NCBI GenBank assembly: GCA_964036045.1
Contig: OZ038378.1
Coordinates: forward strand, 58,156,001-58,220,000
Length of the DNA stretch: 64,000 nucleotides
Reading direction: 5' to 3'
From: Eutreptiella sp. 'Long Island Sound 2002'
Taxonomy: Eukaryota > Protista > Euglenida
Shown: positions 8,627 to 46,325 of the stretch, piece after piece
How positions within the stretch are numbered: position 1 is the first letter of the stretch
Layout: each line of letters begins with the position of its first letter
Translations under genes and position numbers: made by a program
Notes under the pieces: model-generated
Seen by the model: only the letters and a program-made list of their open reading frames with translations
The model's database searches: none
Told to the model about the DNA's origin: nothing

Positions 8627-8810
8627 TCAAGCCGGGTCACACAATAGAGGTTCAAGCAGGTTCACACAATGGAGATCCAAGCCGGTTCACACAATGGAGA
8701 TCCACGGCGGTTCACACAATGGGGGTTCAAGCCGGTTCCCACAATGGAGATCCAAGCCGTTTCACACAATGGAGATCCAAGCCGGTTCGCACAATGTAGA
8801 CCCAAGCGGA
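8627..8810 (+). repeat. 25-bp minisatellite, about 7 copies
   Basis: Unit CAAGCCGGTTCACACAATGGAGATC. Confidence 0.85.
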
Positions 8811-11559: not shown

Positions 11560-12895
11560 CCGCCACAGACTGCCATCCTTGAGTTGTACCATTGCCTTTG
11601 GCAAGTGCTTCTACCCCCCTCCCTGCACCGCCCAATTGCTATCCATAGCTGCCAACTCCACCAACTCAGTCCAAGCGGCCAAGGATCCGTGGCACTCGTT
11701 CCCCGACATCTACAAACCTTCCCTTCCCCTCCACTTTGGACTACCTCCCCACCTTGGTCGGGCCTGGGTATGAGTCCTTGGTGTCCGTCGCGGCCCCTCT
11801 GCCCCCCTTACCCCGTCCATTCGATCAATTTTTTTGCGCAAGCCCACCTAGACGACCCCCGGTGGACCGCTGCCTTTAACATAGCCCCCTCCTCCTCCTT
11901 CCCCATCAAGGGGTACCAAGATTTGCAACACATCATCTCCACCGACACATTGCATGCCGTGATAACCCGCCTATATAGCCGCTAATCACCCGCGCACAAA
12001 TCTAGGAGCTAGTGCTCTTCACCAAGCGGCTCTGGCCACGTGCACCACAACGGACCTCGGCTCGTTGCACCTAGGTTCCGCCACTCGCCCGTACGTCCCA
12101 ACTCCCCATGTTCACTAACACTTTTATTGCCCCGGCTACAGTCGCCCCCCCCCCCCCCCCGAGCGCACGGGCCCCCATCCCCTCAACTTGTAGGCCCCAC
12201 CGCGGTCCCTATTTCGCTCCCGTTGGGACTCCATCTCCCGCCCTCAAAGTTGGCTGGGTCTCTGGGCATAGGCAGGGCGCCCACCCCTCCGTGGCTCACT
12301 CACACACCCACAATCTTCCAACGGTTTTCTACGTGACGGATGCCAAAATGCACAGTTGTGGACCCGGTTATGCCCACGTCATGGCAAGGAAGCTGAGTTG
12401 CGCTCACTGTAGGGGCCGTGCTGCTCCCTTGGGGCACCCTACACAACGCGAAGGCCGTGGCACTCCGCCGAAGAGGGCCACTAGCGCCTAGCAGGAGGGG
12501 GACAATCATCCGTGCAGGGCTGCGGTCAAGGCCGTAACACGCTCCAAGAGAATGTTGTGGCTGCTTGCCGTCGGTATCTAGACGTGCAACACCACTAAGT
12601 CGCGGGCAAAAGTTGTTGGGGAAACATTTTCAAAATATGCTGGCAGGGTTTTGAGAAAAATGTGTGTGTTCACTAGGCGGCCTGCTTGGTATAGTTGTGG
12701 CGAGTTGAAGAGGTTCTGCGGCCATTGTGCGGCCGCAGGCACTACCCACAATTACCTCGTTTGCGGCAATCTTTTGAGGAGGCAATTTGGGGTCTACCAC
12801 ATTTATTACTTTGCAAGGAAGTGGAGAGCCCTGTAAAAGTTCTCCTACTTCACAATGCTTGGGCGTCACAAGTTGCCCACCCTCTAGGACCCGGT
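11560..12895 (+). mobile_element. Highly decayed non-LTR retrotransposon remnant with possible RNase H-like segment
   Basis: Fragmented frames include PTVFYVTDAK (RNase H-like first acidic motif). There is weak peptide similarity to 49400-51000, with many stops and frameshifts. Confidence 0.3.
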
Positions 12896-13063
12896 ATACG
12901 CGCGATGTGACAATATTCTACATTTCTACTTTGAGTATGCTATTTGACATATGTGACCAAAGTTGTTGGCAGAGCTGTGTGACACCCGTTGAAATACGTG
13001 TTGATGTGTTAGCCTTGTGTATCCACTTCTTCTACTGTGTTGTGTTTGACGTTTTTTTGAAGC

Positions 13064-13362
13064 TGGCCGAAACTGAGGCCAGCTTTTGGGTAATATTGCA
13101 AACAACTATGTGTATATGCAGTTTTCCACCCTTCTGGCCAAAATTTCGGCCAGCTTTTTGGTTTCCTAGTGAATAGGCATTTTTATTTTCATTTTTCTTA
13201 GGGCTGGCCGAAATTTCGGCCAGCTTTTTGGTCTGTTCACTATTCAAGCACTTCTTTTCCGGTTTTTGGTCGGTCTGGCCAAAATTTCGGCCAGTTTTTC
13301 CCATTTTTGAACATTTAAGCAATTATTTCCCCTTCAAACAGACCTGGCCGAAATTTCGGCCA
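13064..13362. repeat. Array of five 18-bp palindromes TGGCCGAAATTTCGGCCA with unique ~52-bp spacers
   Basis: Copies start at 13064, 13135, 13205, 13276 and 13345 (periods 71, 70, 71, 69). Confidence 0.92.
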
Positions 13363-13434
13363 GCTTGCAATTGTCATTGTTCATGAGTATTACAGCTTAC
13401 ACTCCTACATAACTGTTTTCTTGTCTCAGCATTA

Positions 13435-15638
13435 ATGTCTTCTGCTATTTCTGTCAATGTTGTACATGCTGCAGCTACTGGTGCTTTTGCTACTACAGCC
13501 AAAGGGCTGTTGCGAAATGCATTACGTGGTGGGACTCTGCAAAAGCTTTTGCAATTCTGCCTCATGTTGCGGAGGAATCGCAGGAGGCGGCACTCCATGA
13601 CACAGTTGAAGGCTGCCGCCACTGAGAAGAAGCCCCCACGATGGTACATGACATTTTTGTCACAGTTCCATGCCCGATACTGCCTGCTGCGTCGTATGGC
13701 CCTCCCATACTCTAACTGTGGGTCTGGTCACAACTGGGGTATTATGTCCTGCCGCCAACGCCGTAAGGTAGGAGTCCTTGGTCAGTGTAACACGAAACAG
13801 GAGTCCATTCACCATCGTGCTGGACTAGCAGCACACAACTTGTGGAACACCATGCACCGTAGGCAAGTTTGTATATGGTTTGATAACCTGAGGCGTTACA
13901 AGTCGGGAGCTGATCCCCATTCACCTGACTTAACCCTAAACTGTACAGCTGTTGCTGTTTTGCACACTACTACCCTACCTGCATACCGGGGTCTGCCGGA
14001 GCTGGCCGAAATTGAGGCCAGGGTACCAAAGGTTGGAGATGACATCTATCGGTCACATAGAGCATTGTTTGATCGTATTGATGTTGCCAACCAAGGTATT
14101 CAGAGAGTTTGGGTCGTGCTCGTTTAGATATTGCCAGAAAAAAGGTTCGTTCCCTCAACTGGAGACCCTTTTTCCTGTCCGAGCTCCGCTCCGGCACACA
14201 CAAAGAGCTTTTGCAACTCGTGGTTGATTTGTCATGTGTGGAACACCGCACTAGACACTGTGTTCCGCTGCTTGTGGACATGAAAATACACTTTGCCCTA
14301 CTTAAGCTGTGTTATGGTGCCGCTTATGTTCCGTGGAATGTACCACAACTACTGTTGGGTTTTCCTTTGGTGTACGGAGTATGGCATAGCTATAAGTAGT
14401 GTGTTGAATTGATCTACAGGGCGTTCCTGCCGTTCATTAAGTTTTTGGAGCAGGGGAATAGCCTTCAAGTTGGGTCTATCCTCCCTCGCAAGGTCAAGGT
14501 CATCCATATGGAGAAGACGTTGCTTGGACTCATGCTAGCCACATCGTCCAATAGAGGCAAGCTAGATGAGCGCGCATCTGCCCTGCTCAGTAGCCAGCGG
14601 GACTTGACACCCATTCAACGCAAGGGTTTGCGTATGTTATTAGCCCTTAAGGCTTTGCTGTACACATACTGTCGAGCTGCTTTCAGCATTGGGACTTTGG
14701 TTCGTGAGTGCAACTGGGAGGGCCGGGGGGCAGGTTCCGGGATTGTTGCTAAGCAGGCACTTGAGATGTCCCTACTGCTCATGCTGAACATCCTAAAGCC
14801 CGAGGAGCAGTTAGCCACGGAGTATGTGAAAACCACTGCTGTTGCTCTTTTGTTTTGGAGTCAGTGGCATTCTGCCTCCCTAGGGTATATCCAATCCGAG
14901 GAGCTGGGTGAGGCACTTCTGAGTCGGTTCTCAGCCCACTGTCGCCGCAACACAGCCTGTGCCAGTGTCCTACAGTCTTCTGATTTGTTTCTGACGCTTC
15001 CCCCTGTCCAACCGGGAGAGAAAGTTTTGCGTGGTGTGCTGACTGAGAGATCCGTGGCAATGTTTTCTGCCAATCTTAAACAATTCATCTTGACCGCCCA
15101 TACACAGAGCCTGCCCATATGTGTTCCCGTTCCGGACTACAAAGTTGAGGTGAGAAGACTAGATGCAGCTGAGGATCTGACTTTCCCCGGTACAATGTCT
15201 AGGACACGAATCACCACAGACCGGTTACAATCGGTTCTGTTGCATGCAATGCAAAATCTGCTTGCGCGTACCAGGGTTCGTGAGGGTGTTGAGGATTTTT
15301 TACAGACAAATGCACCCGCTCGCACTGCTGCCCAGCAAGGGGTATTGCGTACTGCACATGCTTCTATCCGCACTGCCAACCGTGCACCGCCTGCTGCTCC
15401 TGGTGGGATTGCCTTGCCCCCAAAGCCACCCCCGAAGCCCCGAGCCAGAGCCCCCCCAGTACCCCCCCCCAGCCCCCCCCCCCCCGCCCAGTACCCCCAC
15501 CCCGCCCCCGATGATTCCGTTGCCATCGACTCTTGTGATAGTGACCGGGATATTGATTGTGATGCAGACAGCGTTGCCTCCTTTGAAGCCCTAGATGAGG
15601 CAAAACACATCAGTGTGGATACCCAGGACTGGGACTGA
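13435..15638 (+). pseudogene. DDE transposase, CMC/Transib/RAG1-like, with a frameshift near 14127 and a stop near 14397
   Basis: Motifs are CIWFDN (D1), PLLVDMKIH (D2), YGVWHSYK (xxH) and IQSEELGEALLSRF (E; resembles Transib SEEAxEA). All align with the copies at 38.2-41.5 kb and 55.2-56.6 kb. Confidence 0.65.
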
Positions 15639-15731
15639 TTTCTGTTTGCAGCTGTGTTTGTCACTGTGGTATGGGTTTTGCCACGCATTGCCAGTGATTT
15701 TGGTGTTTCTATTTGCTGTTTCATGTTTTTC

Positions 15732-15888
15732 TGGCCGAAATTTCGGACACACTTGTTGTTTGGTCATATGGCTACCCCCGGAACACAAATGACATGCGGT
15801 TCTGGCCGAAGTTTCGGCCAGCCCCTCAGAATACTATTTCTGCACAGTGGTTTAGCATGCAGAGCAGTGCTGGCCGAAATTTGGGCCA
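15732..15888. repeat. Second intergenic cluster of three 18-bp palindromes
   Basis: Copies at 15732, 15803 and 15871 (periods 71, 68). Confidence 0.9.
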
Positions 15889-16007
15889 TGTTATCCGATT
15901 TTCCTGTCAGGCGGTCCGTTTTGGTCCTTTTTTGGTTGATCCGCGCTTGTTATTTGCTATTTGGGAACTCTCCCCTCATGAAATGTTGCCGTGTAGCATC
16001 TTATTTG

Positions 16008-18399
16008 ATGACTGAGCCTGGAGAGGTATCACAGGACGTGGCTGCTTCGCCACATGGTGAGCCTGCAGCAGACAATGGGCAATCTCAAGTGCAATCCCAG
16101 TCTCGAGAGGACCAGGCGAGCACAGAGGGACTTCAAAAGAAGCCTAAGGCCGCACCAAAGAAAAATTCAACATCCTCCATCAAGTTATCCAACTGGGTTA
16201 CGTCAACGACGAAAATAAAGGTTCGCTGGGACCCGATTATTATTGACCACGACCGAAAATTTGGGCAGGTCCGTAGGATATCGGATGATCGCGTGCAACG
16301 CCGCTACGACGATCTGAAGGCAGCCCCGCCTGTGGATTACATCCAGGATCTCCTTTTTTATAAAGTCACTCGTATGTGTGTTGTGGTATTCTTCTCGATG
16401 GTACCGTTTTTGTGCCTGAATTTTCGACCCTGCTGTTTCGAATATTCATGTTGCGCAGCCACTCGCTGGGTTCTGTTGGGGGGTCAGCATGTTTACACTG
16501 CTGCCCAAAAACACAAGACGGAATTTGAGATGAAAAATATGGAGACTCCGGATTGGACCCTGGTATTTGGTGGTTATGAAGTCAAACAGGACTGCCCCCT
16601 GCGGACTAGGCGCCGGCTTGCAGGCTTACATCAAATCCAGACCACTGCTGGCTCAGCATCCACCACATCGGAGCATATGTCCCTACTCCTGGATAGGCTT
16701 GAGGATGAGGATGCCAATGAGTACACCCTTTACCATCACATTACTGTTATGCTTGAAGAGTGTGGTGTTACTGCCGAGGAAGGCACTGTGGTGTGTTTCG
16801 TTTATTAATTCGGTTTCGTCGATCGACCTAGCCGAAATTTCGGCCAGCTTCTGTGTTCCACACGTTCTCCTGTGCAGACTGCTGTTGCCAAACGGTGGGT
16901 TGGCGTTGGGCGTTTGGTGAAATTTGTGGGTCTTGCTGCAGTAGACGCCATGGCAGCCATGGAGAAGCGTGGATTACATCCCGCACGGGGTACGTTCAAG
17001 GAAGTGGAAGGCATCACGCTTGACCGACTTCGCGACATCGTAGGTTACATGGATGGGACAAAAAGTACCCTACCTGATCTCAAAAAAAATTTTAAAAGAT
17101 GTTAAAAGGGCCCAGATGTGGTCCTGGCACATTCTTCATCCCGAGGCGGTTGCCAATGGGCTTGTGAACAACACCAAAGGTATGTTTTGGTCAAACAGGG
17201 GTTTGTATTCGAATAAATCGACCGACGTGGCCGAAATTTCGGTCAGCTTGTGTGTCGTTCAAGTAATGCACAATAGGAGCCCACCGCGTGATACCACCTG
17301 TCTGCAGCTACACTTGGTACTATCGAGATGGCCAAAAGGCAGTGCGCTATCGCATCACACCTGAAGGTAGCCTATGGCAGCTGGACCTCGACTGAAGAAA
17401 ACCCCTGGCCACCGTGGTCTGCAGTAATTAAGGCCCCTCTTTGGAAGGAACCCAAATATGAGGTTTGCGGGGATTGTTGCAGAAGCCTGTTGCTAAGCCT
17501 GTTTGTGAAAAATCTGATACTGGTCTGGTTAGTATCCAGTGTGCTAGGGAGTCCCTCGTGGAGACAAGCACAAGCAAACTCATTGCAGAGTCAGGGCCGT
17601 GTGGAACTGATGGCAATGCGTTGTGGAGTCCTTGTTCCCAGTATCATTAGTTCACTGCCCTTTGGTGCTTGTGTCATTGAGTTGCCCCGCCTCTATACAG
17701 CTAGCTGGTTTGCATAACCTGGTTGCGCAGGTGCTTCTGTCCGGTGTGCCTGTGTTCATTGCGGGTGCCACTGTTGCTGCTTTGAAGGCCACTGTGGCTG
17801 AGGATATGTATCAGTGTGATGTTGCAATTTACAATTTGTCAACCAAGACCCCGTTGTATACTTCCACTTCCCATCTGGTTTCCGTTTGTTGTGCCACCGC
17901 CTTTGATAACAGGATGCCCCGTTACGTGGCTTATACTGAAGGACCCATGTCGTCTGTGATGCCTGTTGAGATATTCTCGATTCTTTTGAGCCTGGTTCCG
18001 GTCCCAGAACGGGCAGGCAATTGGTTTCTGCTGGGGACTCTGTCTGTGTATTTTGCAAGCATGATGTCTACCAGGTTTTCGAAGGACTGTAATGTTGTGT
18101 GTGCCCTTTTGGGTGAGGAGACTGTTGTGCCTGATGAGTTTGTTCTGTCCATAAGAGCGGCTATCACCAACGCTGACACGTGCCCCCCCAAGTCATGGGA
18201 GGATGTGTACCATGATTTGGGGGCAGGTTTTCCTGTGGATTGTTCTGGGGTTAGGTATGTAGATGAGGATCCTGAGGAGCAAGATGGGGAGGCAGAGTCG
18301 CAATCAGAGACACACACTACAAAGAAGAAACCCAAAACTGCCCCTGCCCCCTCACCCAGTGGCACGCAGTGCGCTCAGGCCACCCCAGCTTCCTCCTGA
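16008..18399 (+). pseudogene. Multi-exon gene: ParB/Srx-like N-domain, helical region, possible degenerate DNA-methyltransferase-like C-terminal region
   Basis: GQVRRISDDRV...WVLLGGQHVYTAAQK...RRLAGLHQ resembles ParB box I (QxR) and box II (G.hR..A). GT-AG introns lie at 16372-16458, 16791-16877 and 17180-17263, with a frameshift near 17095. The C-terminal block aligns with 42956-43810. Confidence 0.5.
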
Positions 18400-18622
18400 G
18401 GCACTGTGGCCCCTACTGGCAGAGGTATGAATGCTTTTGTGAATCATTTTTTACCATCCCAGGGTGGAAACACACAATCACAGAACTCTGCCACTGCCAA
18501 GCCTTGTGCTGCAGCCCATGCCAAGCCTCCTGCCAACACAGGTGCTAAGAAGCCCCGTGCATCTGGTCAGCGCAAGCGCTAATGCCAGTCCTACTGCTCA
18601 TATTGAGTGTCAATATGAAGTC

Positions 18623-18944
18623 TGGCCGAAATTTCGGCCAGCATGCAGTCCTCAGCCTCTTCAGCCTCTTATTATTGTGTCTCCCCATAGGCACTGCAAA
18701 AGTCTGATTTGATTCGTCAGGTGGCAAGTATTTGCTTGTAATTGAGTATATTATGTTGCACACCCTGTTCAAATGTCACTGCTCCTGTGTTCCTTGCTCA
18801 TGTCTACTGTCATAGGTACCCATTTCAGTGATCATATTCGGAGTTTCGATGGACCTGGCCGAAATTTCGGCGAGCTTAGGCCTGTCTGCCAAATAGGACC
18901 ATGTGTTTGGACATTTTTCGAAGAGCTGGCCGAAATTTCGGCCA
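18623..18944. repeat. Downstream copies of the 18-bp palindrome
   Basis: Copies at 18623, 18856 and 18927; the last pair is 71 bp apart. Confidence 0.9.
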
Positions 18945-20746
18945 GGCTGGTTAAAATAGGAAATAGAAGTACATGCTTTGGGGATAGTTTTCTGTGTCCT
19001 TCGATGAAAGGTATGTTTGGGGTTCCCTTATCTGTGATGTATAGGGGGGTTCTGTGATCACCATGGAACAGAGGGGAGAGAAAAAATAGCCCCCCCCCCC
19101 CCCCCCCCGCACTGGAATGCAGTGGTCTAAATGTAAAACAACACTATATTTTGGTGATTGAATATCTTTATTTTGAAAATCTGTGTGTTTCCAGAAATGC
19201 AAATAATGGCATATATTTGAAGTACACACCTTGTTTTTGCATGTTGCCACCAGGGGGGTTTGGATACCCGAAAAATAACACCCCTTTTCACATACTTTTC
19301 CCCTCACTACAACATGGACTTCCGTGGGCCATAGCGCCAGGTGGGGAGTGGGCAACTTGTGACGCCTAAGCAATGAAGGGGAGTCACCAGAGGTTGGAGC
19401 ACATGTTGCGCTACAGCCTGGTGCCCAAGCCTCCTGTAGCTGAAGCTAGTTGTGCAAGTGGTGATGTAAAACCACACCATGATGATTCTGTGACACCAAA
19501 CGGGTGGGATGTAACGTGGAGGGCGCAATTGGGGAGGGGCCCACGCTTTTAGGAAGCTAGGCCGGGCGTGCCACGGCACGCTTTCTAAGCAAAACGGACC
19601 ACCGTGGAACCCTTGAAAGGCGGCTCCGATGTTGCAAGTGAGGAATATGAAGATGGATGGTGAACGATCGCGTTGGTTGCTTGTGGGACAGGGTGCCTAT
19701 CGCGGACTAGGGGGGCGGGCGTTTTGGCGGCGGTGGGTGTGAATGACAACTAAATTGACATGAATGCGTACCTAATTAGTATTTCGTTCACGGGGATCAT
19801 TTCTACTACAATGTTGGCGAGGTAATTTTACCGTTTTGCGCATCATTTGGACATGGTGGGTTCGTTGGAGGTTTGTTCTCTGCTCGATGATGTGGAGCGA
19901 AATAATGGCGAGAGTTGAAGACCTCAACATGCTACGTATCAAGCCAAAAACATTGATTTCTCTTGGTAATTCCCAGTTGCGGCACTCTCACATGAGCTAG
20001 AGTTGCCCATTTCAATGGCCCCTTAACCCCCGTTTAGAAAGGGTACCCGTACGCTACAAGCGGGGAGTGGCCCTTTGCAACCGGGGGCCAGCAAGGCCCT
20101 GGGGCGGGGTGGCGAGGGGTGGGTGCGGGGGGAGTTGCGTTCAGGTATGCGAGGTTCTGGTGTTGGGCGTTGTGGTATGGGAGTTTAGGGCTGTGGGTCA
20201 AAATGCCTCCCATAATCCCCCCCCCCCCCGCACCCCAACCGCACACTTGAGCAAACGCTTAAAGTGCGGGCTCGAGGCTGTTTTCATATGCTTAATTTTT
20301 GAAGGGGTGCAAAAAATATTTCCAGGTTAATATCAAACGTTAATTTTCATATTTGGAACGCCGGTCCAAAAGTTAAATGTCAACCTCCACGTATTAAACC
20401 AAGTAGTCGAAAAATTAACCTTAAAAAATGGGGGTAGTGTGGGCGTTTTGTGTTTGCGCTTGTCCTGTCCGGATGTCTGAGGTGTCATGCAAGGGTGTGT
20501 GCCCTAGTGGCCTAGATTAAAGTCAATATGTTTAATATTTGGCCAAAAATTAACACGTTAATCTCAAGTTTCAATTTTTGTAGGGGGGGTTAGGGGGTTT
20601 GCCGTGAAAATTATGACCCCCATGGGTTGCCTTATAGGCTTGGGTGTCATTTCCCCCCAAGGGTTGGTCGGGGGGTCCTACCCATATGGTTGTTTCAAAA
20701 TGTTAAAATGGCTCTCGGCTTTAATTTTTGTTTTTAATTTTTTCAA

Positions 20747-20897: not shown

Positions 20898-21213
20898 CCA
20901 CAAACGAAGCGTCTAACCCCCCCAACGCAAACCCTACCACCGAACCCACTAACCCAAATAATCCCACCAACCCCACTAACCCCCCATCCGGACCCGCGAA
21001 GATGTGGGACCCCACTACGGGGTCCCATGAGGTATGAGGGCCCGGATAGGGACCCAATGGGCTACAATGGCCATGGACAACATACATAAGCACACACATG
21101 ATGCATTACATGTTGCGTTGTGCCATTGTTAGGAGGGTTAATATTTGGGGAAATGAGCTTGTAGTTGTGAGATTAATATCAATGTCGGGGACATTTTAAT
21201 TTTTAACTTTTTG

Positions 21214-22755: not shown

Positions 22756-22759
22756 GTGG

Positions 22760-36017: not shown

Positions 36018-38201
36018 GGTGGCCGGGGGGGGGGGGAGAATGCGGGCCACCGGGGGGAGGGTGTCCAAGACACCCAGCAACACAACATTGGAACCTCTTT
36101 ACTATACCGCTGTGCAACAATATACCACGTACCACCCCTTATAGGTCCTCATGTGTGCATGGAAAAATGTGTACAAATGGCCCAATCGCAAAAATTTGAC
36201 TTTTAACCTCTTAATATTTGCGAGATTAATATATTAACGCCTTCATATATTAAAAATTAAGATTAACCATCTTGACTTTAATCTAGGTCACCGGGGTAAA
36301 ATGATGTGCCGGCTGCTCATATTGGCTAGCAAGATTAGGAGGGGAGGCTTTTTTTCAACCAAGTGGAGGTAGGGTAGCCTCCTTGATTTGCAGGGCTTGG
36401 CCTTAGTCCTTGTGTGTTCCTTCCCCCTGCTTTGCCTCCTTAACCCCTTCTTTCGTCCCCGGCTTGTGTTTCGTAACCCCCACCTTTGTCATCCCGATTG
36501 TCCCCGCGTTCTCCGTCATCCCAGTTGTCGCTGTCAGTGTTTGCACTTTGGCTTCCTGCTTGGCCAGCTTCATCTCCGCTGCCTCCTCACTATTAAGTAG
36601 CAAAACCCGCTCCATCTCATACCACTCTCTAAGAGCGTTCTACCCCTTCCCCTTCTTTTCGTGAAACATGTAGCAACACGTAAAATGGTCCCTTGTTGCT
36701 CACCCACCTTCGACACCGGGTCGTCCTCTTCTCACGACGCACCACTTGTCCCCCTCCCCCACTTTACCCGCGATGGGGAGGCCGCCACTTGTCCTCCTTC
36801 CCTTTCTCCTTCTCCATCGCCTTTGCCGTCCTCTTTCCTGACTTCATCCTCTTCTCTGCGTCCAGCTTTGGTCTCCTCGTATGTACCACATCGTCGGATT
36901 CCCAGTCCTTCGACTGTTACTGAGAAATGAGCCGCGTTAGGGTTGCGGTAGGAAGCTATGGAGTGGAATTCTGGTTGGGCAAAGAATTGGAATGGGGGCT
37001 GGGGCTAGCGAAATAGGTTCTCAAGAGCCGTTCTACATGCCGGCTAATTATAAAACGCGCACTTGCACTTAGATTGTCTGTAGACAAACTATTAGAAAAT
37101 AGTTGGCAAGAACGATGAAGCATATACATTCTAGCCGGCGACCGTTCAAACAAGGCGTTAAGTTTCCTATCGCGCGGAGGAACTCGTCCAAGGCACATTG
37201 CCGCGGATTGAAATGCCCTCTTCTTCCCATGCCGTGTTGGACACCAAGTGACCTTCGACATGGGGCTAATTCGCTACTGAGGATGACGGTGACGGGGGAA
37301 GGGCTGGTGGGGGTTTGTGGGGGGCACGTACCCAAAGCTTCGTTACCCGGTTATGGCATCGCAAAGCTGGCCATGGTAGCTGGGGCACAGTGCGATGGAC
37401 ATATTGTTACGCATATATTGCATTGGAGCGAATGTCTCAACACATCTCAACAATTTTACATTTAGTGTTCTAATCAAACTGACGTAGACACCTACAAGTA
37501 TATTTTAATGCAAAGTTGGCCTGTTGCGCTCTGCAGAGCGCTCCAAACCCTGTCTGTACGAGTCGGCCCGTCATTTCTTTCAATTCCTATTCCATTCACT
37601 CTGGAGAACGCAAATCTGGCCGAAGAACTATTTTGCAATACATTTTTTTGGTTGATGAAATTATGTATGGATTGTCATTGGGTTTTCGACAGTCGTATGG
37701 GACAGTACATGGCTGGAGGGGACACCAGGAGCTATAAGGTGACAAGGTATGGTACATTTACATTTTGTGACATGTATGTGTGGTTCCCCTAATTGTTAGT
37801 ACGATTCAATGTCCTGTACCAAAGAGTAGTACAACCATTCTTCACCAGTTGCCCGTGTTCCGCTCTGCAGAGCGCAAATTCTTACAACGGCATGAAACTT
37901 GGTGCTTTTTCTAAGTTTGCCGACTGGAGCGCTCTGCAGAGCGCATTTAACGTGATATGCTCAATGGAGATCCCTGTTTTTGGTTGTTCCGCATTGTTTG
38001 CGCTCTGCGGAGCGCAAAGTTTCCTACTGTCCTTGTTTTGGTAGCACAAATGTACTTGTTGTTCAACGATTTAACGTGGCATGTATCGCCGCAACGTTAC
38101 TTGACCGGTGTCCCTTCATTTAGTTTGTTTTCAGGCTTGTTCGTGCCATGGATGCCTCACTGCTCCGCGCCTTCTTGTAGGAGCGAGAATACAGTTCAGG
38201 T

Positions 38202-41200
38202 TTGGATGTAATGCAGCATGCTTGTTCCCATGGTGGTTATGCCTTGCAGTTCGTTGAATTTTTTATGGCACTGAGGGCTGATCAACATCATTACCGAACT
38301 TTTGGAGACGTTCAACAGATGTTGATAGTTATGAAGGTAACGGGTAAAGGTTTGCCTTGGTTTAATCAATTGTGCCAGGTGTCATACAATCTTTATTTGT
38401 TATTGCATAAGCAATGGAAACCCCGTACCAAGCGTAGTTCTGCTGAGGCTGACGTTCCCATCTCTCGTGCAGCACGCCGTAAATTATCCTATACTGGTTT
38501 ATGTTTGTACGGTGCCCCCACTTTTTCACAGCAGGCCGCTGATGTTGCTGCTCAGCGTTCAGACGAGCTTTCTAGTTCACCTTGTGTTGTGTGGTATGAC
38601 AACCGGTACAGGAAACATTGGTTACCCACCTCATCTGGTGCCAATGCATCCTTGAACTACTGTGTATTTGCAATTGTGCCGCTGCGACCCGAACATGATA
38701 TTTTTCCACGATACCCTCAACTGGGTAGTTTGTCTTCCAAAACAGGGGACATAGCGACATCGGTTTTTCAAATCATAACACAATGCTTGCTAACTTGGAC
38801 AATGCACTAAACGGCTCCCTTGCACTATGAGATGCAAGGTGCCCCTTAGATGTGAAACGCAAAGGGGTTGAGAGTTTGCAGTGGAAACCCCTTCTGCTTT
38901 CCCCACTGCTCACTGGCACCCAATGCGATCGAGCGCGAATTTTGAAGTTTGTGGCCAGTCTGCAACAGAAGTCCAACCGGGTTCTGCCTATGTTGCCCAA
39001 TACACGGGGGGGGGGGGATTTCGTGGTGGAAGAAACGGTGTCTGGAAAAATTTACTACGGCCAATTCTAGCGCAATTTTCCCCATCATTTTTAACGATTG
39101 TGGCACAATTTTCCCATACTTTTTTTTGGACATCAAGTTCAAAATTTGTACCCTGTCCGGGGGGGGGGGGTATGATCGGGGGAGGGGAGTGCAGAATGAA
39201 ATACGTCATGTGGATGTATGGTCTGGTTCGATTCTGTGTCGTCTGCTGTGGATACTGCTGCAATCAACACAGGGTTGTATCCTTCAGGGCACTTCAGGCT
39301 GCCTACCACATGTAGTTGCCAGTTAATAGTGAGCGCAGTGTCAACTGACACTGTGTTCTCTGTAGGTCGCTGTTCGGCAAAGGCAGCTGCAGCCGAGTAC
39401 CTGGATGAAGACGTCCACATTCTGTTGCACAACTTTTTCCCGACCGAACCCTGCACCTGTACCTCCGCCTTGACAGCCTCCAATGCAACGTTTTTTGGTG
39501 AACTCCTCTTTGGTGCAGTCATCTGATGTTCAGCGAGACCTAGAGAGGGCTGCACAAGCTGTCAAGGCCAAGCAAGCGTAGCGCAAATCCAAGAATGTTG
39601 ACAAGAAGGACAAATATTGGCTAAAATGGGGCGATGCTGAGAGGCGTGAGTGTGATGACATTGATTTCAAACGGGACATGAAAGGCATACGATGAACAGT
39701 GCACCACTGTCTTGTTGAAAAATGGATTTTCCCGATTCCGGGAACTTGCTTCGAACCAGCCACCACATTGCGTCCCTGTGGTGTGCCAGCTGGGGTGGCG
39801 CGCTTGCTTGTCGATGAGGTCAAACGTTCAGTGGCTGCCACGGAGCGTCCTCCTAGTACCACCCTTCCGCTGTCCAAGAAACGGCGGATTTGAGTTTTTT
39901 TGTTTTGAGTGGCGCCCATGATTATCTGTGTCTGTAGGTACAGCTGGGGCAATAATGTATTTGATAGATGTTGTCACTCTTTTGCTGGCAATCTGTTTTC
40001 TGTGAACTGCCCGACAATGTTTCAAGAAAAATAGTGGGGGGCCACAGCAGAAAATACCCAAAAGCAATTGCAAAAGGATGAAGAGCAAGGCCCAAGGACT
40101 CCTAAGTTGGGAGTTGCGACCAGGGTCAGCGGCTGGGCGCAATCAGTAATTTGGATGCCACTTGCAGTGCAGGGAACTGCGTGGACCTGAGCAAACTAGA
40201 CCCTCATCACATCTTTTCCTCAAGTGGTGTCCCCCTCAATAAGGAGAGCCGACCTTAGGCCTTGCCCTTCACCATGGAAAAGGGCGTCGCAATTTTGCCC
40301 ATCACTTTTAACGATTGTGGCAGAATTTTTCCCCCGCGGAATTTTTCCGGGCAGAATTTTTCCTATACTAAAATCCCCCCCCCCCTGTATGAAGATTTCT
40401 TACAGTGTGGCAAAAATGTTGTACTCTAGTACATGTGACGTCTACAAGCTTCATAATGTTATCCGTTACTGTCCTATGGTGTATGGTGTTTGGCATGCGT
40501 ACAAGTACTGCTGTGAAGCACTGTATCGCAAATTCTTCTCTCTATGTACCTTTTCGTCATCTAGTCCACAAGGTGCTCATACGGACGTTTACACACACCC
40601 CAAGCTGATTTGGAAGGAAAGGCTGTTCATGAGTCTGTTACTCGTTGCCCCCCAATACTTGCAACAGTTGAAACAAAAACTTTGCGCTCTGCAGAGCGCT
40701 CCAGTCGGCAGTAGGTTGGTACTGCAACAACAGTGTTCGCAACAAACAGAGGCAATGTTCAACTTGTTGAATGATTACGTTCCCAGTTTGTTTATTTTGG
40801 GTATGCTAGTCCGTGATTGCAACTGGTGTACGGCGCGAAGAGTTCAAGTGCCTCACCCAGCACAATTGTTGTGGAATATGTCTATGCTGGTTGTATTGCG
40901 ATTGTTTGATGGTTCCGAGGGTTGACACAAATATCTCAAAACCTTGGCAGTAGCAAAACTGTTGTGAGTTCCATGGCATGGTACAGCCTCCCCCAGTACG
41001 CACAACGAGGAACCTCGTGAGGCCATGCTCTCTCGGTTTGCTGAGAAGTTGCGGCAATTCCCATCCACCTCGTGCAAACTCGAGGGGACCATTGACCTTT
41101 TCCTGCTGGTTGCCCCGGCCGCGGGGGGTAAAAAAGATTTGCCGAAAAGCAGGCTTTAGTAGCGCGTTGTAGATGCCATTCGGATGCACCTTTCAATGTT

Positions 41201-41540
41201 TGTGCGGGATGCGGACCGTGTCCCCCATCCAGCTGTGCAATGGTCATCTGCTCCTCAGGTGAAGGTGGTGGGTGCCTGGCCGGAGTCCATGGCTCTCCCG
41301 GGATCACTGGGGGATCGCTTTTCAACCCAACGGCTGCAAGATTTTCTGGTGAAAACATTACACACATTTGCAGGTGCTGTGGATGTGAACAATAAAACTG
41401 TAGATGTGCTTAATTTATTGTGTCCACGGTATACTCATCGGGAAATAGCCGCGGCCAAGGCAGAAATGGATCACAACTTTAGGCAGAACCCCCTCCCACA
41501 ACGATACCACTGGCGTCGACCCCCCCCCCTCCTCAGCCCC
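38202..41540 (+). pseudogene. DDE transposase of element B, interrupted by a TIR element
   Basis: VVWYDN, KGVESLQWKPLLLS, MLPN|MKISY, YGVWHAYK and NEEPREAMLSRF align with the element A transposase. Confidence 0.65.
39003..40387. mobile_element. 1385-bp TA-TSD TIR element inserted in the element B transposase
   Basis: TA|CACGGGGGGGGGGGGATTT ... AAATCCCCCCCCCCCTG|TA. Removing it and one TA restores the frame (CCC AAT ATG AAG ATT). Confidence 0.85.
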
Positions 41541-41559
41541 TGCTGCACCACCTGCCCCC

Positions 41560-43810
41560 CCTGTTGGCGGGAGTACGAAAGTGAGGAGTTGAAGCAAGAT
41601 GAAAAAGTAGCCTTGATGGCTGCGCTACGAAAGGCTGGCCAGATCCGTGGACCCGAGAAATCGGTATACTGCCTGTCCCCATCAAAATAGTGGCGTTGGT
41701 GAATTTGCGCTCTGCAGAGCGCTTCGACTGCATGTGTCCTAAATATGATGGTAGTTATTGAGGTCTCGTACTTATCGCGCCCTGGAGAGCGCAAATCTGG
41801 AAACCCCCTTCGTTTTTGGGTGTCAGGAGAACCTGTGGAAAGCCTGGAGACCCCTGCAGCGCCTGGTGGTAGCAACGGAGAACGGATGTGAGGATGGGCT
41901 GAAGAATTTCCCGAAAGTCTACAAGGAAGGTAATGTCCTGCCGCTCAATGTGTCCCAGGGTCACAAAACACGTCACCAACGGTCCTGTATACCATTGTTA
42001 GTGCCTGCAGGGATTACCTGTACCACCCTTCGCCCTATATTGGGCCTGGATGCGGACCACTGCCAAGAGATCATCCACTACATGGCATCGGACAAGGCAT
42101 TGTTACATGGGTTCAACAAATCATGCCGGAGACTGAAGCATGACCGCAACTGGGAGTACGTGTACCTCCATCCAGAGAATACCATGATCCACGAAACTCA
42201 AAGTATGCCTGCTCTCAAATCCTGCCCGTTAAGCAACCGTGCCATCCTCTTGTGCTCTGCAGAGCGTAAAACTTCCTGTACCACCAAATCAGCCATTAAA
42301 TTTCGACCTGTGCATCAATTTGCGCTTTGCAGAGCGTAAAATTTCCTGTACCACCAACTGCTACATTAAACGTGCAGAGCGCATCGCTACCGAAATGTCA
42401 CTTGAACCCCCTGTGTGGATTTGTTTATGCGCCCTCCCAGGAAAACCAGAGGAACTGGCACGTGTACGGAAGCTGATGACCAGAAATACAGCAATTAAGT
42501 CGAATTTTGGCAAGTGGGTCCGGTCAGCGAATTCCGAGTATCCTCCTTGGTCTGTTGTGGAGAAGTGTAAGCTGTGGGCAAGTGAGGAGTGGTGTTCCTT
42601 CCGACTGGCTCTATCAAAGCCGCAAGTGATACCAAAGGTGGGCATCAGTGGAGAGAAGCTGGCAATGCTGACGTTGAACGAGATGGGTGCATCACCATCA
42701 CTTCTGGAGACGACTGAGGCGGGCGACGCGAATGACGCCATGGGAGAAATGAGGATCTTCTCATTGGGTGGTACCAGGGGCGTGCCAGCTGGCGACGCAG
42801 ACCCTCCTTTTGCTGCGGTATGCACTGCCATAGCACAATTCTTTGTCTCGATGTCTCGATGTCCAAATTTAGTTTGACCCCCCCCCACGGGGGCCTGTTG
42901 CCTGTCTGCCCCCCCCCCGCACTGCCTCACCCACTCCTGGTCCCTCCCCGTACCCATGCAGATCCTTGTGGAGCTTGAGGATGAGTACATGGGTGAGGTT
43001 CATCCCTTATTGGACACAATATTGGGCAAGGAGGTCCCCATAGCTATTGTGGGTCGTGGCAAGGCGCTGAAGTTCTTCATCGACCAATTGCGTGGGCTGG
43101 ATAGCTGCGATGGCTGGCAATTGGTCTCAACTACTACCTACGATAAGACTACTGGCACTCCTATTATGCGGATGGTGGAGAGAACGGTGCATTTTGGAAT
43201 CCCCCATAAGTTAGGCATAAAGGTACCCAGTTTTTTTTTATATGATCCAAGCGAGTACAAGGCACCCCTCCCACTCCCTGTTGTTGGTTGGTTCCTGAAG
43301 GCTCTGAGGGTTGTGCCCAGGCATACACAACCTTCCGAGGAATCTGCTTGGATTCTGGCTGGCACGTCTAATGTTACGATGCCCTGTCACCTCTTCAGAT
43401 GCCTGACGGAATCAACTTGTGTTGTGGTCGCATACACAGGCAAGTATGCTGACAAGCCTGAGTTCGTGAGCCAGCTAGGGACCACCATAGCACATATGGA
43501 CTGTTTTTGCATTGTGGAATGGCTGGAGTGGTTCCATTGCATCGATGAGGGATGTTTGTGTGAGGCAGCCAAGGCACAGCCCCCAGAAGAGGAGAATTCT
43601 GAGGATGAAATTGAGCAGGTCGATGTCCTCGATGCACCTGCTGATGATCTAGTGGCCAGCAAGCGCAAGACCTCAGGTGGCGATCCTCGTCCCCCAAAAG
43701 AAGAAAAACACCGAACACCTCTCAGACACCCGATGCCACTTCTGCCATGGATGCTTTTGGCCGCAAAAGCCAAGCAAGCGAAGCCATCAGCAAAGAAGGG
43801 CAAGAACTGA
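41560..43810 (+). pseudogene. Second gene of element B (ParB-like region plus possible methyltransferase-like C-terminal region)
   Basis: GQIR and PFVFGCQENLWKA correspond to GQVR and WVLLGGQHVYTAA in A. The C-terminal block PLPVVGWFL...SAWILAGTSNV...CVVVAYTG...PEFV aligns with PVEIFSILL...GNWFLLGTLSV...CNVVCALLG...DEFV. Confidence 0.5.
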
Positions 43811-46325
43811 ATTCTCTGAGCCCTTTTTGATGCGTGCATGTTATATGGTTTCAATTTTTTTGCGCTCTGCAGAGCGCAAATTTTGCAACTTGTACGTTTT
43901 TGGGCCTGCTACTGTGCCTGTTCGTACGAGAAGTGCTTCCTGCTTGCGTCACGTTTTTGAATCCGGCCTTTGGGGGTCCATCCTTGTCGCATTGCAATTG
44001 ACACCACTGATACGGTGTAATGCATTTCTATCAGAAGCATTGGTGTCTTTGTCTATTTGAAAACGTACCCGCAGAAATTCTCAATCTTGCTTTGTATGTT
44101 TCATGTGTGACATACATGCACATCATCAGAAAACCGTTTGTTTCGTCTTTTGTAGGTGGCTCATTTTCAAGTCGGAGTATGCAAAGAAAAGGCGCAAAAC
44201 CTACAAAAAGTGGTTGTTGGAATCACCAGTAAAAATGTCGTTGACCAACATCACCAATTTTGGGGTTGAAAAACAGCATTTTGAAACGGTGGTCCCATGC
44301 GCCCCGGGAGTGCTATGCCCGTGACCTAAAGAGTCGGCTAAGACCCTAGGCCCTCAACGGACCTCCCCACAGTTCGCCCCGGGCGCCGCTGTCCCCCGGT
44401 GGCAAACGTGCACGCGCCGCTGGTAGTAGGGGGTGCACCTTTGATTTGGTGCACCTCCGCATACAACTGTCAACGGACAATCGTCTCGTGCTTCCTCAAC
44501 AGCACCGGCTTGTGGGGACGGACAACATTAGGAACAGTCATGTCCATGGTTGTGGCGTACCTTGCTTGAACATCCCTTGAGGCTGGCCATTCCCTTCCAC
44601 GGCTTGTGGCTCGTTTGTTCCTTGGGTCACTTGCAGAAAATTGTTTTTGATGTGCGCATCCCCGGTCCGTTGCGTTGCTTCTCTTTTCCAACTACGCGCG
44701 CTGCTGGCCCCCATGGGACAAATTTCACGCTGCACTTCTCCTGGGCGTTGGACATGCGCCAGCCCACACACTATGGCACTACAAACCACAGCAGCCAACG
44801 CCACACCCCTGCATGCGACAGACCTGGAAACCAGCCCTCAACAAACCACAACGCCTAACACAACACCCCCACATACCAAAGCTCTGGAACCCCCCCCCAC
44901 ACACAACACCATACACCACAACACTAGAAATCACACCCTGAAACCAAAGCCCGAAACATCACACCCCCACACACCACAGCCCCAGAAACCACATCCACAC
45001 AAACCACAACCCACGCACCACTGGCCCACACACCACAGCCTTGATAACCACCCACCCCCACAGCACAGCCGTGCGAACCCCCCCCCTCTCCCCACAACAC
45101 ATCCTCAGACACCACATCACCAAACATCACCACCCTACACACCACAATGTGAAGGGGGGGGTGGGCCAATAAAGTTGGAACTAGCCCCTATGTTTGCTTT
45201 GTGGCAATGTGCAAACCATAGCCTACAAGCAAGAGATGAACACACACACACATACCCACACATACATACCTACAACCTTATCCTCTGTCCCATCGTGAAT
45301 CTTCATTTTCATCATCCTTTAAAAGTTTGCACAAAGAATGGGCCATACCCTCCCAAACCCAAACCACAAGGAGAAGGGGGGGGGGGGGCAGCAATGTGGC
45401 CATGGAGGACAAGCATGAGTACAAAAACTTGGTGCGCGGGTAAATGTTTTCTTGTTATGCATTTATAGGGAACTCAGGTACGGTTAATTTTTGCAGAAAA
45501 ACATTTTATTTGTACGAGGTTAATGTTAACGTCGGCGACACATTAATTTTTGGTATTTCAAATTTTAATGAAAAATTAAAATCAAAGATGAAACCCGAGG
45601 ACCATTTTAATTTTTTTTTCCAAAGAAACAGGTGAGACCCCCCCGCACCCGATGCCGTAAAGCACCCCATGGGGGTAGAGATTTTCCCGTCGAAACCACT
45701 CAACCCCCCTGCATCCAACGACAAAGTCAAATGCAGCATTGTGCATTTTGGCATCAAGTCGTGTGTTGGGGTGTGACACGAAACCCTGCTACCGATGGAC
45801 GTCCGGACATGCTCTCCAAAATTGACACATTGGGAGGGGTGGATTGGCTGTCGCCGTCGTAGTGGTAGCCCTACAGACCAGTGTTAGACCCGATACTTTT
45901 ACTATTTGGTCAAATATTATTGCGCTAACCCAAAGTTGACCCTTATGGGGGGGAGTGTTTCCCATTTGTGGGCTAGCCATGCAACCCATGGAAATTCGCA
46001 CAGGGCATATTGATGTCCATGTTCTGCACGAGTGCCGTCACACCACCTCTTAGAACTGCAATCTTCGTTGTGTCACTCTCTAAGTCTTGCGGCACATGGT
46101 TTGCAAGGTGTGATGATGCAAAATCATATACCGGGCACTTGCGCACCATCAGCGACAATATCCACAGCTCCTACAGCCCCCACGTCCAGGGCATTTGGAC
46201 TCGCGTACTACCATGCTTCCAAAGAGTCCATCTACTCAATAACACAATCGAGCCTTGGGTGCGTAACTACTTCAGCATTTTCATGGTCAACAACGTAGGA
46301 GATGCACAACAACCCATCTAATATG

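What the first reader, a model, noticed from the sequence alone, without database searches (positions are those of the whole stretch)
13064..13362. CRISPR-like architecture upstream of the element A transposase
Five 18-bp palindromes are separated by 51-53-bp spacers that are mutually dissimilar apart from a short GCTTTT start. Ordinary tandem duplication would conserve the spacers too, so selection on repeat plus distance is implied. The array sits directly 5' of the transposase ORF.
Basis: seen in the sequence. Interest (0 to 1): 0.8.

Follow-up and report, generated by a model that had tools for sequence, protein, structure and literature searches.

The report
Transposon's private palindrome docking array
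The five evenly spaced palindromes are not a CRISPR-like memory array but a fixed, selectively preserved set of protein docking sites built into a very abundant cut-and-paste jumping gene of a Euglena alga, of a kind already seen in other transposons.

Summary
The five 20-bp palindromes (CTGGCCRAAATTTCGGCCAG, starts 13063-13344, spacing 69-71 bp) are real. They end 72 bp before an ORF whose intact relatives fold as a DDE transposase.

They are not CRISPR-like. The genome is a 2.28-Gb Euglena-type eukaryote. The array belongs to a 6.5-kb two-gene TIR transposon (window 12858-19370, 23-bp TIRs, 5-bp TSD) with 1664 first-look candidate copies in the genome. All 12 copies I compared carry the same spacers and the same 14 palindrome positions. 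The spacers still show weak similarity to each other, as expected of an old 70-bp tandem duplication.

- Between two lineages the palindromes differ at 6% of positions and the spacers at 27%.
- A relative in the same window (transposase ~29% identical) keeps the 69-71 bp period with a different palindrome.
- A gene-less 3.9-kb derivative keeps only the ends and arrays, and carries about 30 palindromes.

Best reading: private docking sites for an element-encoded dimeric DNA-binding protein. The reader protein is not identified.

This scan has already met this transposon family on other DNA of this genome. A 2025 preprint reports similar inverted-repeat arrays in red-algal transposons.

The parts
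12853..12857 (.). 5' target-site duplication CAATG
   Evidence: The same 5 bases occur at 19371-19375. All 12 copies examined have a perfect 5-bp TSD.
12858..12880 (+). 5' terminal inverted repeat (23 bp, CTTGGGCGTCACAAGTTGCCCAC)
   Evidence: Genome copies begin exactly here.
12858..19370 (+). Element A: a 6.5-kb two-gene TIR DNA transposon. This copy is decayed.
   Evidence: Full-length copies are 94-96% identical with sharp ends, and the first look found 1664 candidates.
13063..13363 (.). The flagged array: five 20-bp palindromes at 13063, 13134, 13204, 13275 and 13344, 206-506 bp inside the 5' end and 72 bp upstream of the gene 1 ATG
   Evidence: Positions and spacers are the same in 12 copies. 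The palindromes are conserved like the TIR, the spacers are not.
13435..15638 (+). Gene 1: DDE-type transposase of an unnamed family. It is broken here by a frameshift near 14115 and a stop at 14397-14399. Other copies carry an intact, intron-free ORF of about 738 aa.
   Evidence: AF2 model pLDDT 87.9. P element and Hermes transposases match at Z 9.1-9.2. D150, D232, D282, E490 and E493 are conserved.
14002..14021 (.). Degenerate palindrome (2 mismatches) inside the gene 1 coding sequence
   Evidence: It sits at the same element position in all copies.
15731..15889 (.). Second array: three palindromes (15731, 15802, 15870; spacing 71 and 68 bp) between gene 1 and gene 2, about 90 bp upstream of the likely gene 2 start
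15978..18579 (+). Gene 2: multi-exon accessory gene of unknown function.
   Evidence: No Pfam or PDB-profile match. A homologue lies next to the transposase in L018, and there is a weak match in element B.
16828..16847 (.). Palindrome in a probable intron of gene 2
17227..17246 (.). Palindrome in a probable intron of gene 2
18622..18945 (.). 3' subterminal palindromes at 18622, 18855 and 18926 (the last two 71 bp apart), 425-750 bp inside the 3' end
19348..19370 (-). 3' terminal inverted repeat
19371..19375 (.). 3' target-site duplication CAATG
37526..43877 (+). Element B, a comparison element of the same family with a different private palindrome (GCGCTCTGCAGAGCGC). It has 10 sites, and the close pairs are spaced 69, 71, 70 and 70 bp.
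   Evidence: Its transposase homologue is about 29% identical.

Best explanation
The array is the 5' subterminal and promoter-proximal cluster of 'private' protein-binding sites of a high-copy cut-and-paste DNA transposon of a Euglena-type alga.

Shown:
- The element has 23-bp TIRs and a 5-bp TSD, and it encodes a DDE-fold transposase of a large unnamed family plus a second gene.
- It carries 14 copies of one 20-bp palindrome at fixed positions. Five lie upstream of gene 1, three upstream of gene 2, two in probable gene 2 introns, three near the 3' end, and one degenerate copy lies in coding sequence.
- The palindromes are conserved between lineages like the TIR, while the spacers drift.
- The ~70-bp period is kept in a distant family member that has a different palindrome.
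- A gene-less derivative consists of the ends plus amplified arrays.

Inferred:
- Each palindrome binds a dimer of an element-encoded DNA-binding protein.
- The TIR and the palindrome are unrelated sequences, so two specificities are needed. My best guess is a two-component logic like En/Spm. The transposase core would read the TIR. The palindromes would be read either by the gene 2 product (about 45%) or by the transposase's own variable, basic, helical N-terminal domain of about 90 aa (about 30%).
- Sites 70 bp apart (about 6.7 helical turns, so every third site faces the same way) would let bound dimers assemble a higher-order complex. That complex would mark the element as 'self', recruit or pair the ends for transposition, and control the two adjacent promoters.
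- Non-autonomous copies would compete for the protein by multiplying sites.
- The array itself grew by tandem duplication of a 70-bp unit.
For: - Site statistics: 14 sites in the window against 0.02 expected, and at least 9317 sites in the genome against 0 for the reversed control.
- Element borders, TIRs and 5-bp TSDs hold in 12 of 12 copies.
- Site positions and spacers are identical in 12 copies.
- Divergence between element A and the non-autonomous lineage: palindromes 6.2%, spacers 27.3%, TIR 4.3%, Fisher p=6.7e-5.
- Element B has a different palindrome but spacings of 69, 71, 70 and 70 bp and the same layout: upstream, in the coding sequence, intergenic and downstream.
- Other relatives carry their own palindromes: L018, the metagenome relative L029 with 8 sites upstream of the gene and 1 in the coding sequence, sharing a CGAAAnTTCG core with element A, and L030 with 3 sites.
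- The 3.9-kb non-autonomous element has the same TIR, perfect TSDs in 6 of 6 copies, 29-31 sites, 73% of neighbour distances within 62-78 bp, no gene, copies 97-99% identical, and is built only from the non-coding, palindrome-bearing parts of an A-like element.
- Transposase fold: AF2 pLDDT 87.9, and the top 21 rows of an unbiased search of 48,161 chains are all DDE transposases or integrases, with the P element at Z 9.1. Acidic residues are invariant.
- The N-terminal domain varies across the family. A basic NRRxRR patch is present in the lineages examined with a GAAnnTTC-core palindrome (A, L018, L029) and is altered in element B.
- Precedents: VANC motifs (PMC5735166), Plavaka PAG3 with tandem inverted-repeat arrays (10.1101/2025.02.11.637652), and Hermes subterminal repeats (PMC10368747).
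Against: - No binding protein is identified.
- Gene 2 has no Pfam match, no PDB-profile match, and no homologue outside this organism's assemblies.
- The N-terminal domain of the transposase has no significant fold match.
- The link between the N-terminal basic patch and the palindrome type rests on one contrasting lineage.
- Arrays sit just upstream of both genes, so a purely transcriptional role through host factors cannot be excluded.
- In the metagenome relative L029 the spacing is 86-250 bp rather than 70, so the strict period may be specific to Euglena.
- There are no expression, methylation or binding data.
Confidence: 0.65

Rival explanations
1. The palindromes are enhancer or promoter modules read by host transcription factors. 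The GAAnnTTC core resembles a two-unit heat-shock element. On this view the arrays simply drive gene 1 and gene 2.
For: Arrays end about 70-110 bp upstream of both gene starts. The CGAAAnTTCG core is shared by element A and L029, and GAAATTTC by L018.
Against: Each lineage has its own palindrome. Element B (GCGCTCTGCAGAGCGC) and L030 (TCCGCGCAnnTGCGCGGA) lack the GAA/TTC core, so several different host factors would be needed. The gene-less 3.9-kb element keeps and multiplies the sites to about 30 although it has nothing to express. Sites also lie near the 3' end and in introns. A full heat-shock element needs three units and only two are present.
Confidence: 0.15
2. The sites are read by the accessory (gene 2) protein only for epigenetic self-protection or self-modification, as with VANC or PAG3, and play no part in the transposition chemistry.
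For: 13 of 14 sites lie in non-coding DNA including introns, and arrays form by tandem repeats, as described for VANC targets. ParB-like accessory proteins next to tandem inverted-repeat arrays are reported in red-algal Plavaka elements. A partner gene is conserved in three Euglena lineages.
Against: Gene 2 shows no detectable ParB, methyltransferase or oxygenase domain by sequence and no effector domain is known. It remains unknown whether the distant relatives L029 and L030 have a partner gene. This overlaps with the best explanation and differs only in the downstream effect.
Confidence: 0.3
3. The array is a neutral old minisatellite, a 70-bp tandem duplication with no function. The palindrome merely looks conserved because all copies are recent.
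For: TRF reports period 70 with 77% matches. Residual similarity among spacers is significant. Copies within the genome are young, so their identity alone says nothing.
Against: Between lineages about 20% diverged, the palindromes differ at 6% and the spacers at 27%. The same period with an unrelated palindrome occurs in element B. Single sites occur at nine other fixed positions. Distant relatives have their own palindromes.
Confidence: 0.04
4. The palindromes act as nucleic-acid structures rather than as duplex binding sites. They could be RNA hairpins in the leader or introns, used for processing or small-RNA production, or DNA cruciforms.
For: Each palindrome can fold into an 8-bp stem with a 4-nt loop, at -13.9 kcal/mol. 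Sites lie in the likely 5' leader and in introns.
Against: Sites also occur downstream of gene 2 and in both orientations in gene-less elements. Stems of 8-10 bp are short for Dicer-type processing. Conservation covers the whole 20 bp including the central AATT, which would be the loop. No compensatory changes were seen, and variant sites such as GAAATTGAGG break the pairing yet recur at fixed places.
Confidence: 0.06
5. The array is a CRISPR-like adaptive array that acquires spacers.
For: Only the superficial repeat and spacer geometry supports this: a 20-bp repeat with 49-51-bp spacers.
Against: The genome is eukaryotic. Spacers are identical in 12 copies. The array is an internal part of a transposon that gave 1664 first-look candidates in the genome. 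No ORF in the window matches any Pfam family, Cas families included. Rfam finds nothing.
Confidence: 0.005

Closest known systems
En/Spm (CACTA) subterminal repeats bound by TnpA, with TnpD as transposase (from general knowledge; TnpA is treated as a transposon-encoded regulator in 10.64898/2026.08.24.746577)
   Same: It is a two-gene element whose short repeated motif is distinct from the TIR. The motif clusters in both subterminal regions and overlaps the promoter. Non-autonomous derivatives keep the motif-bearing ends.
   Different: TIR and TSD differ (CACTA with 3 bp there, CTTAGG with 5 bp here). The En/Spm motif is 12 bp rather than a 20-bp perfect palindrome and has no strict 70-bp phasing. 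There is no sequence relation, and here sites also lie between the genes and in introns.
VANDAL (Mutator-like) elements and their VANC anti-silencing proteins (PMC5735166)
   Same: Family-specific short motifs accumulate in non-coding regions, introns and upstream regions. They multiply by tandem repeat formation and are read by an element-encoded accessory protein that co-evolves with them.
   Different: VANC motifs are 8-9 bp, are not palindromic and are arrayed in one orientation. The superfamily differs. No VANC homologue is present here and no methylation data exist.
Plavaka elements of red algae with accessory protein PAG3 (ParB-like N-terminus plus 2OG oxygenase) and adjacent tandem arrays of inverted repeats (bioRxiv 10.1101/2025.02.11.637652). 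Also the ParB-like plus DNA methyltransferase accessory gene of Ectocarpus Sola1 (PMC12477816).
   Same: A eukaryotic DNA transposon carries tandem arrays of inverted repeats next to an accessory gene. The accessory protein is proposed to bind, and perhaps modify, its own element.
   Different: The transposase family differs (Plavaka is CACTA-related and Sola1 is another family, whereas this family is unnamed). A ParB-like domain in gene 2 could not be confirmed here. No oxygenase or methyltransferase domain was detected.
hAT element Hermes: subterminal repeats bound by BED domains of a transposase octamer (PMC10368747)
   Same: Its fold is among the nearest to the transposase here (Z 9.2 over 297 residues). 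Multiple short subterminal sites are needed to assemble the transpososome.
   Different: Hermes has an 8-bp TSD, a BED zinc finger, short non-palindromic repeats close to the ends, and no second gene. No hAT dimerisation domain is detected here.
Bacterial ParB-parS partition sites
   Same: Both use clusters of 16-20-bp palindromes read by a dimer.
   Different: That system is prokaryotic and serves partition. A ParB fold in gene 2 is unproven here.
CRISPR arrays
   Same: Only the geometry is shared: short palindromic repeats separated by spacers of similar length.
   Different: Spacers here are invariant between copies. There are no cas genes, the host is eukaryotic, the array is part of a mobile element, and the repeat is shorter than typical CRISPR repeats.

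Membership tests
CRISPR array | Spacers differ between arrays or strains because they are acquired from foreign DNA | tested here: not met
   All four spacers are the same, apart from point mutations, in 12 genomic copies.
CRISPR array | Prokaryotic or viral host with cas genes nearby | tested here: not met
   The genome is 2.28 Gb and carries about 5600 copies of the Euglena spliced-leader 23-mer. No Pfam match was found in 26 ORFs of the window.
Tandem repeat / minisatellite | Head-to-tail units that align over their whole length | tested here: inconclusive
   TRF reports period 70, 2.4 units and 77% matches. Spacer similarity is weak but significant. This points to a tandem-duplication origin, now diverged outside the palindrome.
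Class II TIR DNA transposon | Terminal inverted repeats, target-site duplication and many dispersed copies with identical ends | tested here: met
   The TIR is 23 bp and the 5-bp TSD is perfect in 12 of 12 autonomous and 6 of 6 non-autonomous copies. The first look found 1664 and 4744 candidates respectively.
DDE (RNase H-fold) transposase | RNase H-like catalytic fold with conserved acidic residues | tested here: met
   The AF2 model has pLDDT 87.9. The top 21 of 48,161 PDB representatives are all DDE transposases or integrases. D150, D232, D282, E490 and E493 are conserved in at least 57 sequences. Which residues form the catalytic triad is not resolved.
hAT superfamily | 8-bp TSD, BED finger and C-terminal hAT dimerisation domain | tested here: not met
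   The TSD is 5 bp. None of 64 family members has a Pfam match. The similarity is at fold level only (Z 9.2).
Transib / RAG1 | 5-bp TSD, CAC-starting heptamer-like termini and RAG1-like core sequence | tested here: not met
   The 5-bp TSD is met, but the termini read CTTAGG. There is no sequence match to RAG1 or Transib chains in the PDB. Fold Z is 8.0 for one Transib entry and 5.3-6.3 for the others.
P element superfamily | 7-8-bp TSD, THAP domain and GTP-binding insertion | tested here: not met
   The TSD is 5 bp and there is no THAP or other Pfam match. The similarity is at fold level only (Z 9.1-9.2).
CACTA / En-Spm / Plavaka | CACTA-type termini, 2-4 bp TSD (8 bp in some), and Transposase_21-like core | tested here: not met
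   The termini read CTTAGG and the TSD is 5 bp. No Pfam match was found.
ParB-parS-like module (as proposed for algal transposon accessory proteins) | An accessory protein with a ParB/Srx-fold N-terminal domain | tested here: inconclusive
   Exon-wise Pfam scans (E up to 10) and a PDB profile search gave nothing. A probable intron splits the candidate region.
ParB-parS-like module | Clustered palindromic sites in the same element | tested here: met
   There are 14 sites in element A and 10 in element B.
VANC-type private motif system | Family-specific motif enriched in the non-coding parts of the element, including introns, and multiplied by tandem repeats | tested here: met
   13 of 14 sites are non-coding. 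Arrays are expanded in the non-autonomous element. Different lineages have different palindromes.
VANC-type private motif system | A VANC homologue and loss of DNA methylation at bound sites | not testable with these tools
   There is no homologue by sequence and no methylation data.

The most novel reading that the evidence does not exclude
The palindromes and an element-encoded reader may form a co-evolving self-recognition code in a previously unnamed superfamily of eukaryotic DDE transposons. The strict 70-bp phasing would build a defined higher-order nucleoprotein scaffold, with every third site on the same face of the helix. That scaffold would license only 'self' copies for transposition or protect them from silencing. 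Each lineage would escape cross-mobilisation by changing its palindrome.
Probability: 0.25. Interest if true: 0.75.

Novelty: new variant of a known kind. Interest (0 to 1): 0.42.

Why it matters
The result removes a false CRISPR lead. It documents, with numbers, a clean natural case of a transposon carrying its own address label. The label is a 20-bp palindrome conserved like the TIR, kept at a fixed 70-bp phase across lineages whose transposases are only about 29% identical. Gene-less hitch-hikers have amplified it to about 30 copies.

The transposase family is large (1323 representatives at 50% identity) and has no Pfam match in any of 64 members scanned. Its fold is closest to P, hAT and Transib transposases. 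Many copies with open reading frames exist in this genome, so the system may be open to experiment.

If the reader protein can be identified, the family would give a tractable model for two questions. One is how transposons tell self from non-self. The other is how binding-site spacing organises a transpososome or a regulatory complex.

Tried and rejected
- **Dinoflagellate origin.** The DinoSL 21-mer has 0 hits, so I rejected this. The Euglena spliced-leader 23-mer, which I recalled from memory, has about 5600 hits against 0 for the control.
- **Sirevirus-LTR-like palindromes** (my first guess from memory). Rejected: the element has TIRs and no LTRs.
- **Pfam scans.** 26 window ORFs, the intact transposase, the gene 2 exons and 64 family members gave no match.
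- **PDB sequence and profile searches.** Transposase and gene 2 exon 1 gave nothing meaningful.
- **Rfam on the window.** Nothing.
- **First AF2 run.** With 11 sequences it failed (pLDDT 37.6). Only the 64-sequence alignment gave a usable model.
- **ESM-Atlas feature search of the largest gene 2 exon.** Scores reached only 0.83 (AAA-like), below the meaningful range.
- **Atlas fold library.** Not installed.
- **Word searches with gene 2 exons.** Hits came only from the same organism's assemblies.
- **Relative contigs.** Those for P0021, P0024 and P0028 were too short to show flanking arrays.
- **Literature.** A search for the palindrome string found no paper.
- **N-terminal domain and Cmr5.** The weak resemblance to CRISPR-associated Cmr5 (Z 4.6) is a generic helical-bundle match and I did not take it as evidence.
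- **Gene 2 spliced model.** Exons were searched apart by reference.

Full report
**1. The observation**

The region 13063-13363 holds five copies of a 20-bp palindrome, CTGGCCRAAATTTCGGCCAG. They start at 13063, 13134, 13204, 13275 and 13344, spaced 71, 70, 71 and 69 bp. The first copy is degenerate. Allowing up to 3 mismatches, the window has 14 sites against 0.02 expected from shuffles.

The other nine sites lie in the same 6.5 kb:
- one at 14002;
- a second phased trio at 15731, 15802 and 15870;
- singles at 16828, 17227 and 18622;
- a phased pair at 18855 and 18926.

TRF finds a period-70 repeat with 77% matches over 2.4 units. Spacers 2 and 3 align at z=3.9. The six pairwise spacer scores together give z=5.0, or z=2.6 after the shared first 10 nt are removed. 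The array therefore most likely began as a tandem duplication of a 70-bp unit.

**2. What the array sits in**

The genome has 2.28 Gb in 2317 contigs. The palindrome, allowing up to 1 mismatch, occurs at least 9317 times, against 0 for the reversed control. The dinoflagellate spliced leader is absent. The Euglena spliced-leader 23-mer, recalled from memory, occurs about 5600 times with 0 in the control. The host is therefore a Euglena-type euglenid, as earlier notes of this scan also say.

Searching the genome with window 12000-20500 gave full-length copies that are 94-96% identical. All start and end at the same bases, and there were 1664 first-look candidates. The element is window 12858-19370. 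It has 23-bp TIRs (CTTAGGCGTCACAAGTTGCCCAC). Its 5-bp TSD is perfect in 12 of 12 copies and reads CAATG here.

Intact copies carry an intron-free ORF of about 738 aa (gene 1). The window copy has a frameshift near 14115 and a stop at 14397-14399. A second, multi-exon gene follows. I searched its exons one by one by reference and made no joined model.

**3. Gene 1 is a transposase, structurally**

Gene 1 has no match in Pfam or in PDB sequences. A profile search of 1.84 billion representatives found 1323 relatives at E<=0.001, so the family is large and unannotated.

With a 64-sequence alignment, AlphaFold gave pLDDT 87.9 and pTM 0.84. Foldseek's weak top hits were Hermes, P element, RAG1 and Transib. 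VIA-align gave Hermes Z 9.2 (297 residues), P element Z 9.2 (342 residues) and Transib Z 8.0. An unbiased search of 48,161 PDB representatives placed only DDE transposases and retroviral integrases in its top 21 rows, with the P element first at Z 9.1. D150, D232, D282, E360, E490 and E493 are invariant or nearly so.

The combination of CTTAGG ends, a 5-bp TSD and a partner gene fits none of hAT, P, Transib or CACTA (see the membership table). I could not compare it with Repbase.

**4. Not CRISPR-like**

In 12 copies the four spacers are the same apart from scattered point mutations, and all 14 palindromes sit at the same element coordinates. Nothing is acquired. The host is a eukaryote, and no window ORF matches any Pfam family.

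**5. The palindromes and their spacing are nevertheless under selection**

(a) A 3.9-kb non-autonomous relative (L019:2693-6615) has the same TIR and a perfect 5-bp TSD in 6 of 6 copies. It carries 29-31 palindromes and no gene. Its copies are 97-99% identical, and there were 4744 first-look candidates. It is assembled only from the non-coding, palindrome-bearing parts of an A-like element, several of them duplicated in both orientations: the 5' end and array, the intergenic array, the 3' region and the 3' end. Of its neighbour distances, 73% fall within 62-78 bp.

(b) Its first four palindromes sit at positions 206, 277, 347 and 420, matching element A's 206, 277, 347 and 418. Comparing the majority states of the two lineages gives these differences (Fisher p=6.7e-5):

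| Region | Differences | Percent |
|---|---|---|
| Palindromes | 5 of 80 | 6.2% |
| Spacers | 42 of 154 | 27.3% |
| TIR | 1 of 23 | 4.3% |

(c) Element B lies in the same window (about 37.5-43.9 kb). Its transposase is about 29% identical and its palindrome is unrelated (GCGCTCTGCAGAGCGC). It has 10 sites in the same layout, and close neighbours are 69, 71, 70 and 70 bp apart. Over elements A and B the eleven short spacings average 70.1 ± 1.0 bp.

(d) Other relatives carry their own palindromes:
- L018 (transposase 46% identical) has CTGGACGAAATTTCCCCCAG-like sites spaced 69 bp upstream of the gene.
- The metagenome contig L029 (relative P0038; family members outside this lineage are 21-39% identical to the element A transposase) has eight TGTCCGCGAAnnTTCGCGGACA sites upstream and one in the coding sequence. 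Their spacing is 86-250 bp.
- L030 has three TCCGCGCAnnTGCGCGGA sites.

Element A and L029 share a CGAAAnTTCG core, and L018 keeps the inner GAAATTTC.

**6. Mechanism**

The following is shown:
- The sites are element-specific, palindromic and conserved like the TIR.
- They are placed in both subterminal regions, immediately upstream of both genes, and in probable introns.
- They are retained and multiplied in gene-less derivatives.

The following is inferred:
- They are docking sites for a dimer of an element-encoded protein.
- The TIR bears no resemblance to the palindrome, so two DNA specificities are needed, as in En/Spm (TnpD for the ends, TnpA for the subterminal motifs).
- Candidate readers are the gene 2 product and the transposase's own N-terminal helical domain of about 90 aa. 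That domain is confidently modelled (pLDDT about 90), varies across the family, and carries a basic NRRxRR patch. The patch is kept in the lineages examined with a GAAnnTTC-core palindrome (A, L018, L029) and is altered in element B. That rests on a single contrast.
- Seventy bp is about 6.7 helical turns, so every third site shares a face of the helix. I take this as a hint of a defined higher-order assembly, not as evidence.
- Likely roles are marking self copies, recruiting or pairing the ends, and regulating the two promoters.
- The gene-less elements argue against a purely promoter role.

**7. Comparison with the literature**

- The Hermes octamer uses several BED domains on subterminal repeats (PMC10368747).
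- Red-algal Plavaka elements carry a ParB-like/2OG-oxygenase accessory gene next to 'tandem arrays of inverted repeats', proposed to bind and modify the element itself (10.1101/2025.02.11.637652).
- Ectocarpus Sola1 carries a ParB-like/methyltransferase gene (PMC12477816).

The present case is a new variant of this known theme, in an unnamed transposase family. I could not confirm that gene 2 is ParB-like. Its homologues come only from this organism's assemblies.

**8. Earlier notes of this scan**

The same family, with its 'private palindromes', 5-bp TSD and CTTAG ends, has already been reported from other windows of this genome. This finding is therefore not the first sighting.
- a quantified contrast in conservation between palindromes and spacers;
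- conservation of the 70-bp phase between elements A and B;
- the gene-less element made of arrays;
- a high-confidence transposase model with unbiased fold evidence.

**9. Verdict**

The CRISPR reading is wrong. It is a new variant of a known kind, of moderate interest.

Noticed in passing
window 37526-43877: Element B is a second member of the same transposon family. It has a different private palindrome (GCGCTCTGCAGAGCGC, 10 sites) and the same 69-71 bp phasing. A gap of 334 bp between its first and second upstream sites suggests an insertion or lost units.
   Followed up: partly
window 55206-56421: This is a third, fragmentary homologue of the transposase (residues 246-630, 30-48% identical). 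I found no obvious palindrome array upstream of it.
   Followed up: partly
L019:2693-6615 (G000:C1:15669692-15673614): A 3.9-kb gene-less element has the same TIRs and about 30 palindromes, with long internal inverted duplications that give it a foldback-like build. Its copies are younger (97-99% identical) than the autonomous ones (94-96%).
   Followed up: yes
whole genome: Most of the 66 best-scoring transposase matches in the genome are open frames of 704-775 aa without stops. The family may still be active.
   Followed up: no
window 8602-8829: There is a tandem array of a 25-bp unit (about CAAGCCGGTTCACACAATGGAGATC) with at least 7 copies, outside element A.
   Followed up: no
window 19090-19109 and 12145-12160: There are two homopolymer C runs: about 20 C inside the 3' non-coding part of element A, and 16 C upstream of the element.
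   Followed up: no
whole genome: The Euglena spliced-leader 23-mer occurs about 5600 times, dispersed on both strands of chromosome-size contigs. That is far more than expected for a simple SL-RNA gene cluster.
   Followed up: no
The three long ORFs I scanned in 21211-23561 gave no Pfam match. The claim was not examined further.
   Followed up: partly
model mca5bdc00d749, residues 1-91: The N-terminal helical domain of the transposase aligns weakly with CRISPR-associated Cmr5 (Z 4.6 and 3.9). This is probably a generic helical bundle and I did not take it as meaningful.
   Followed up: no
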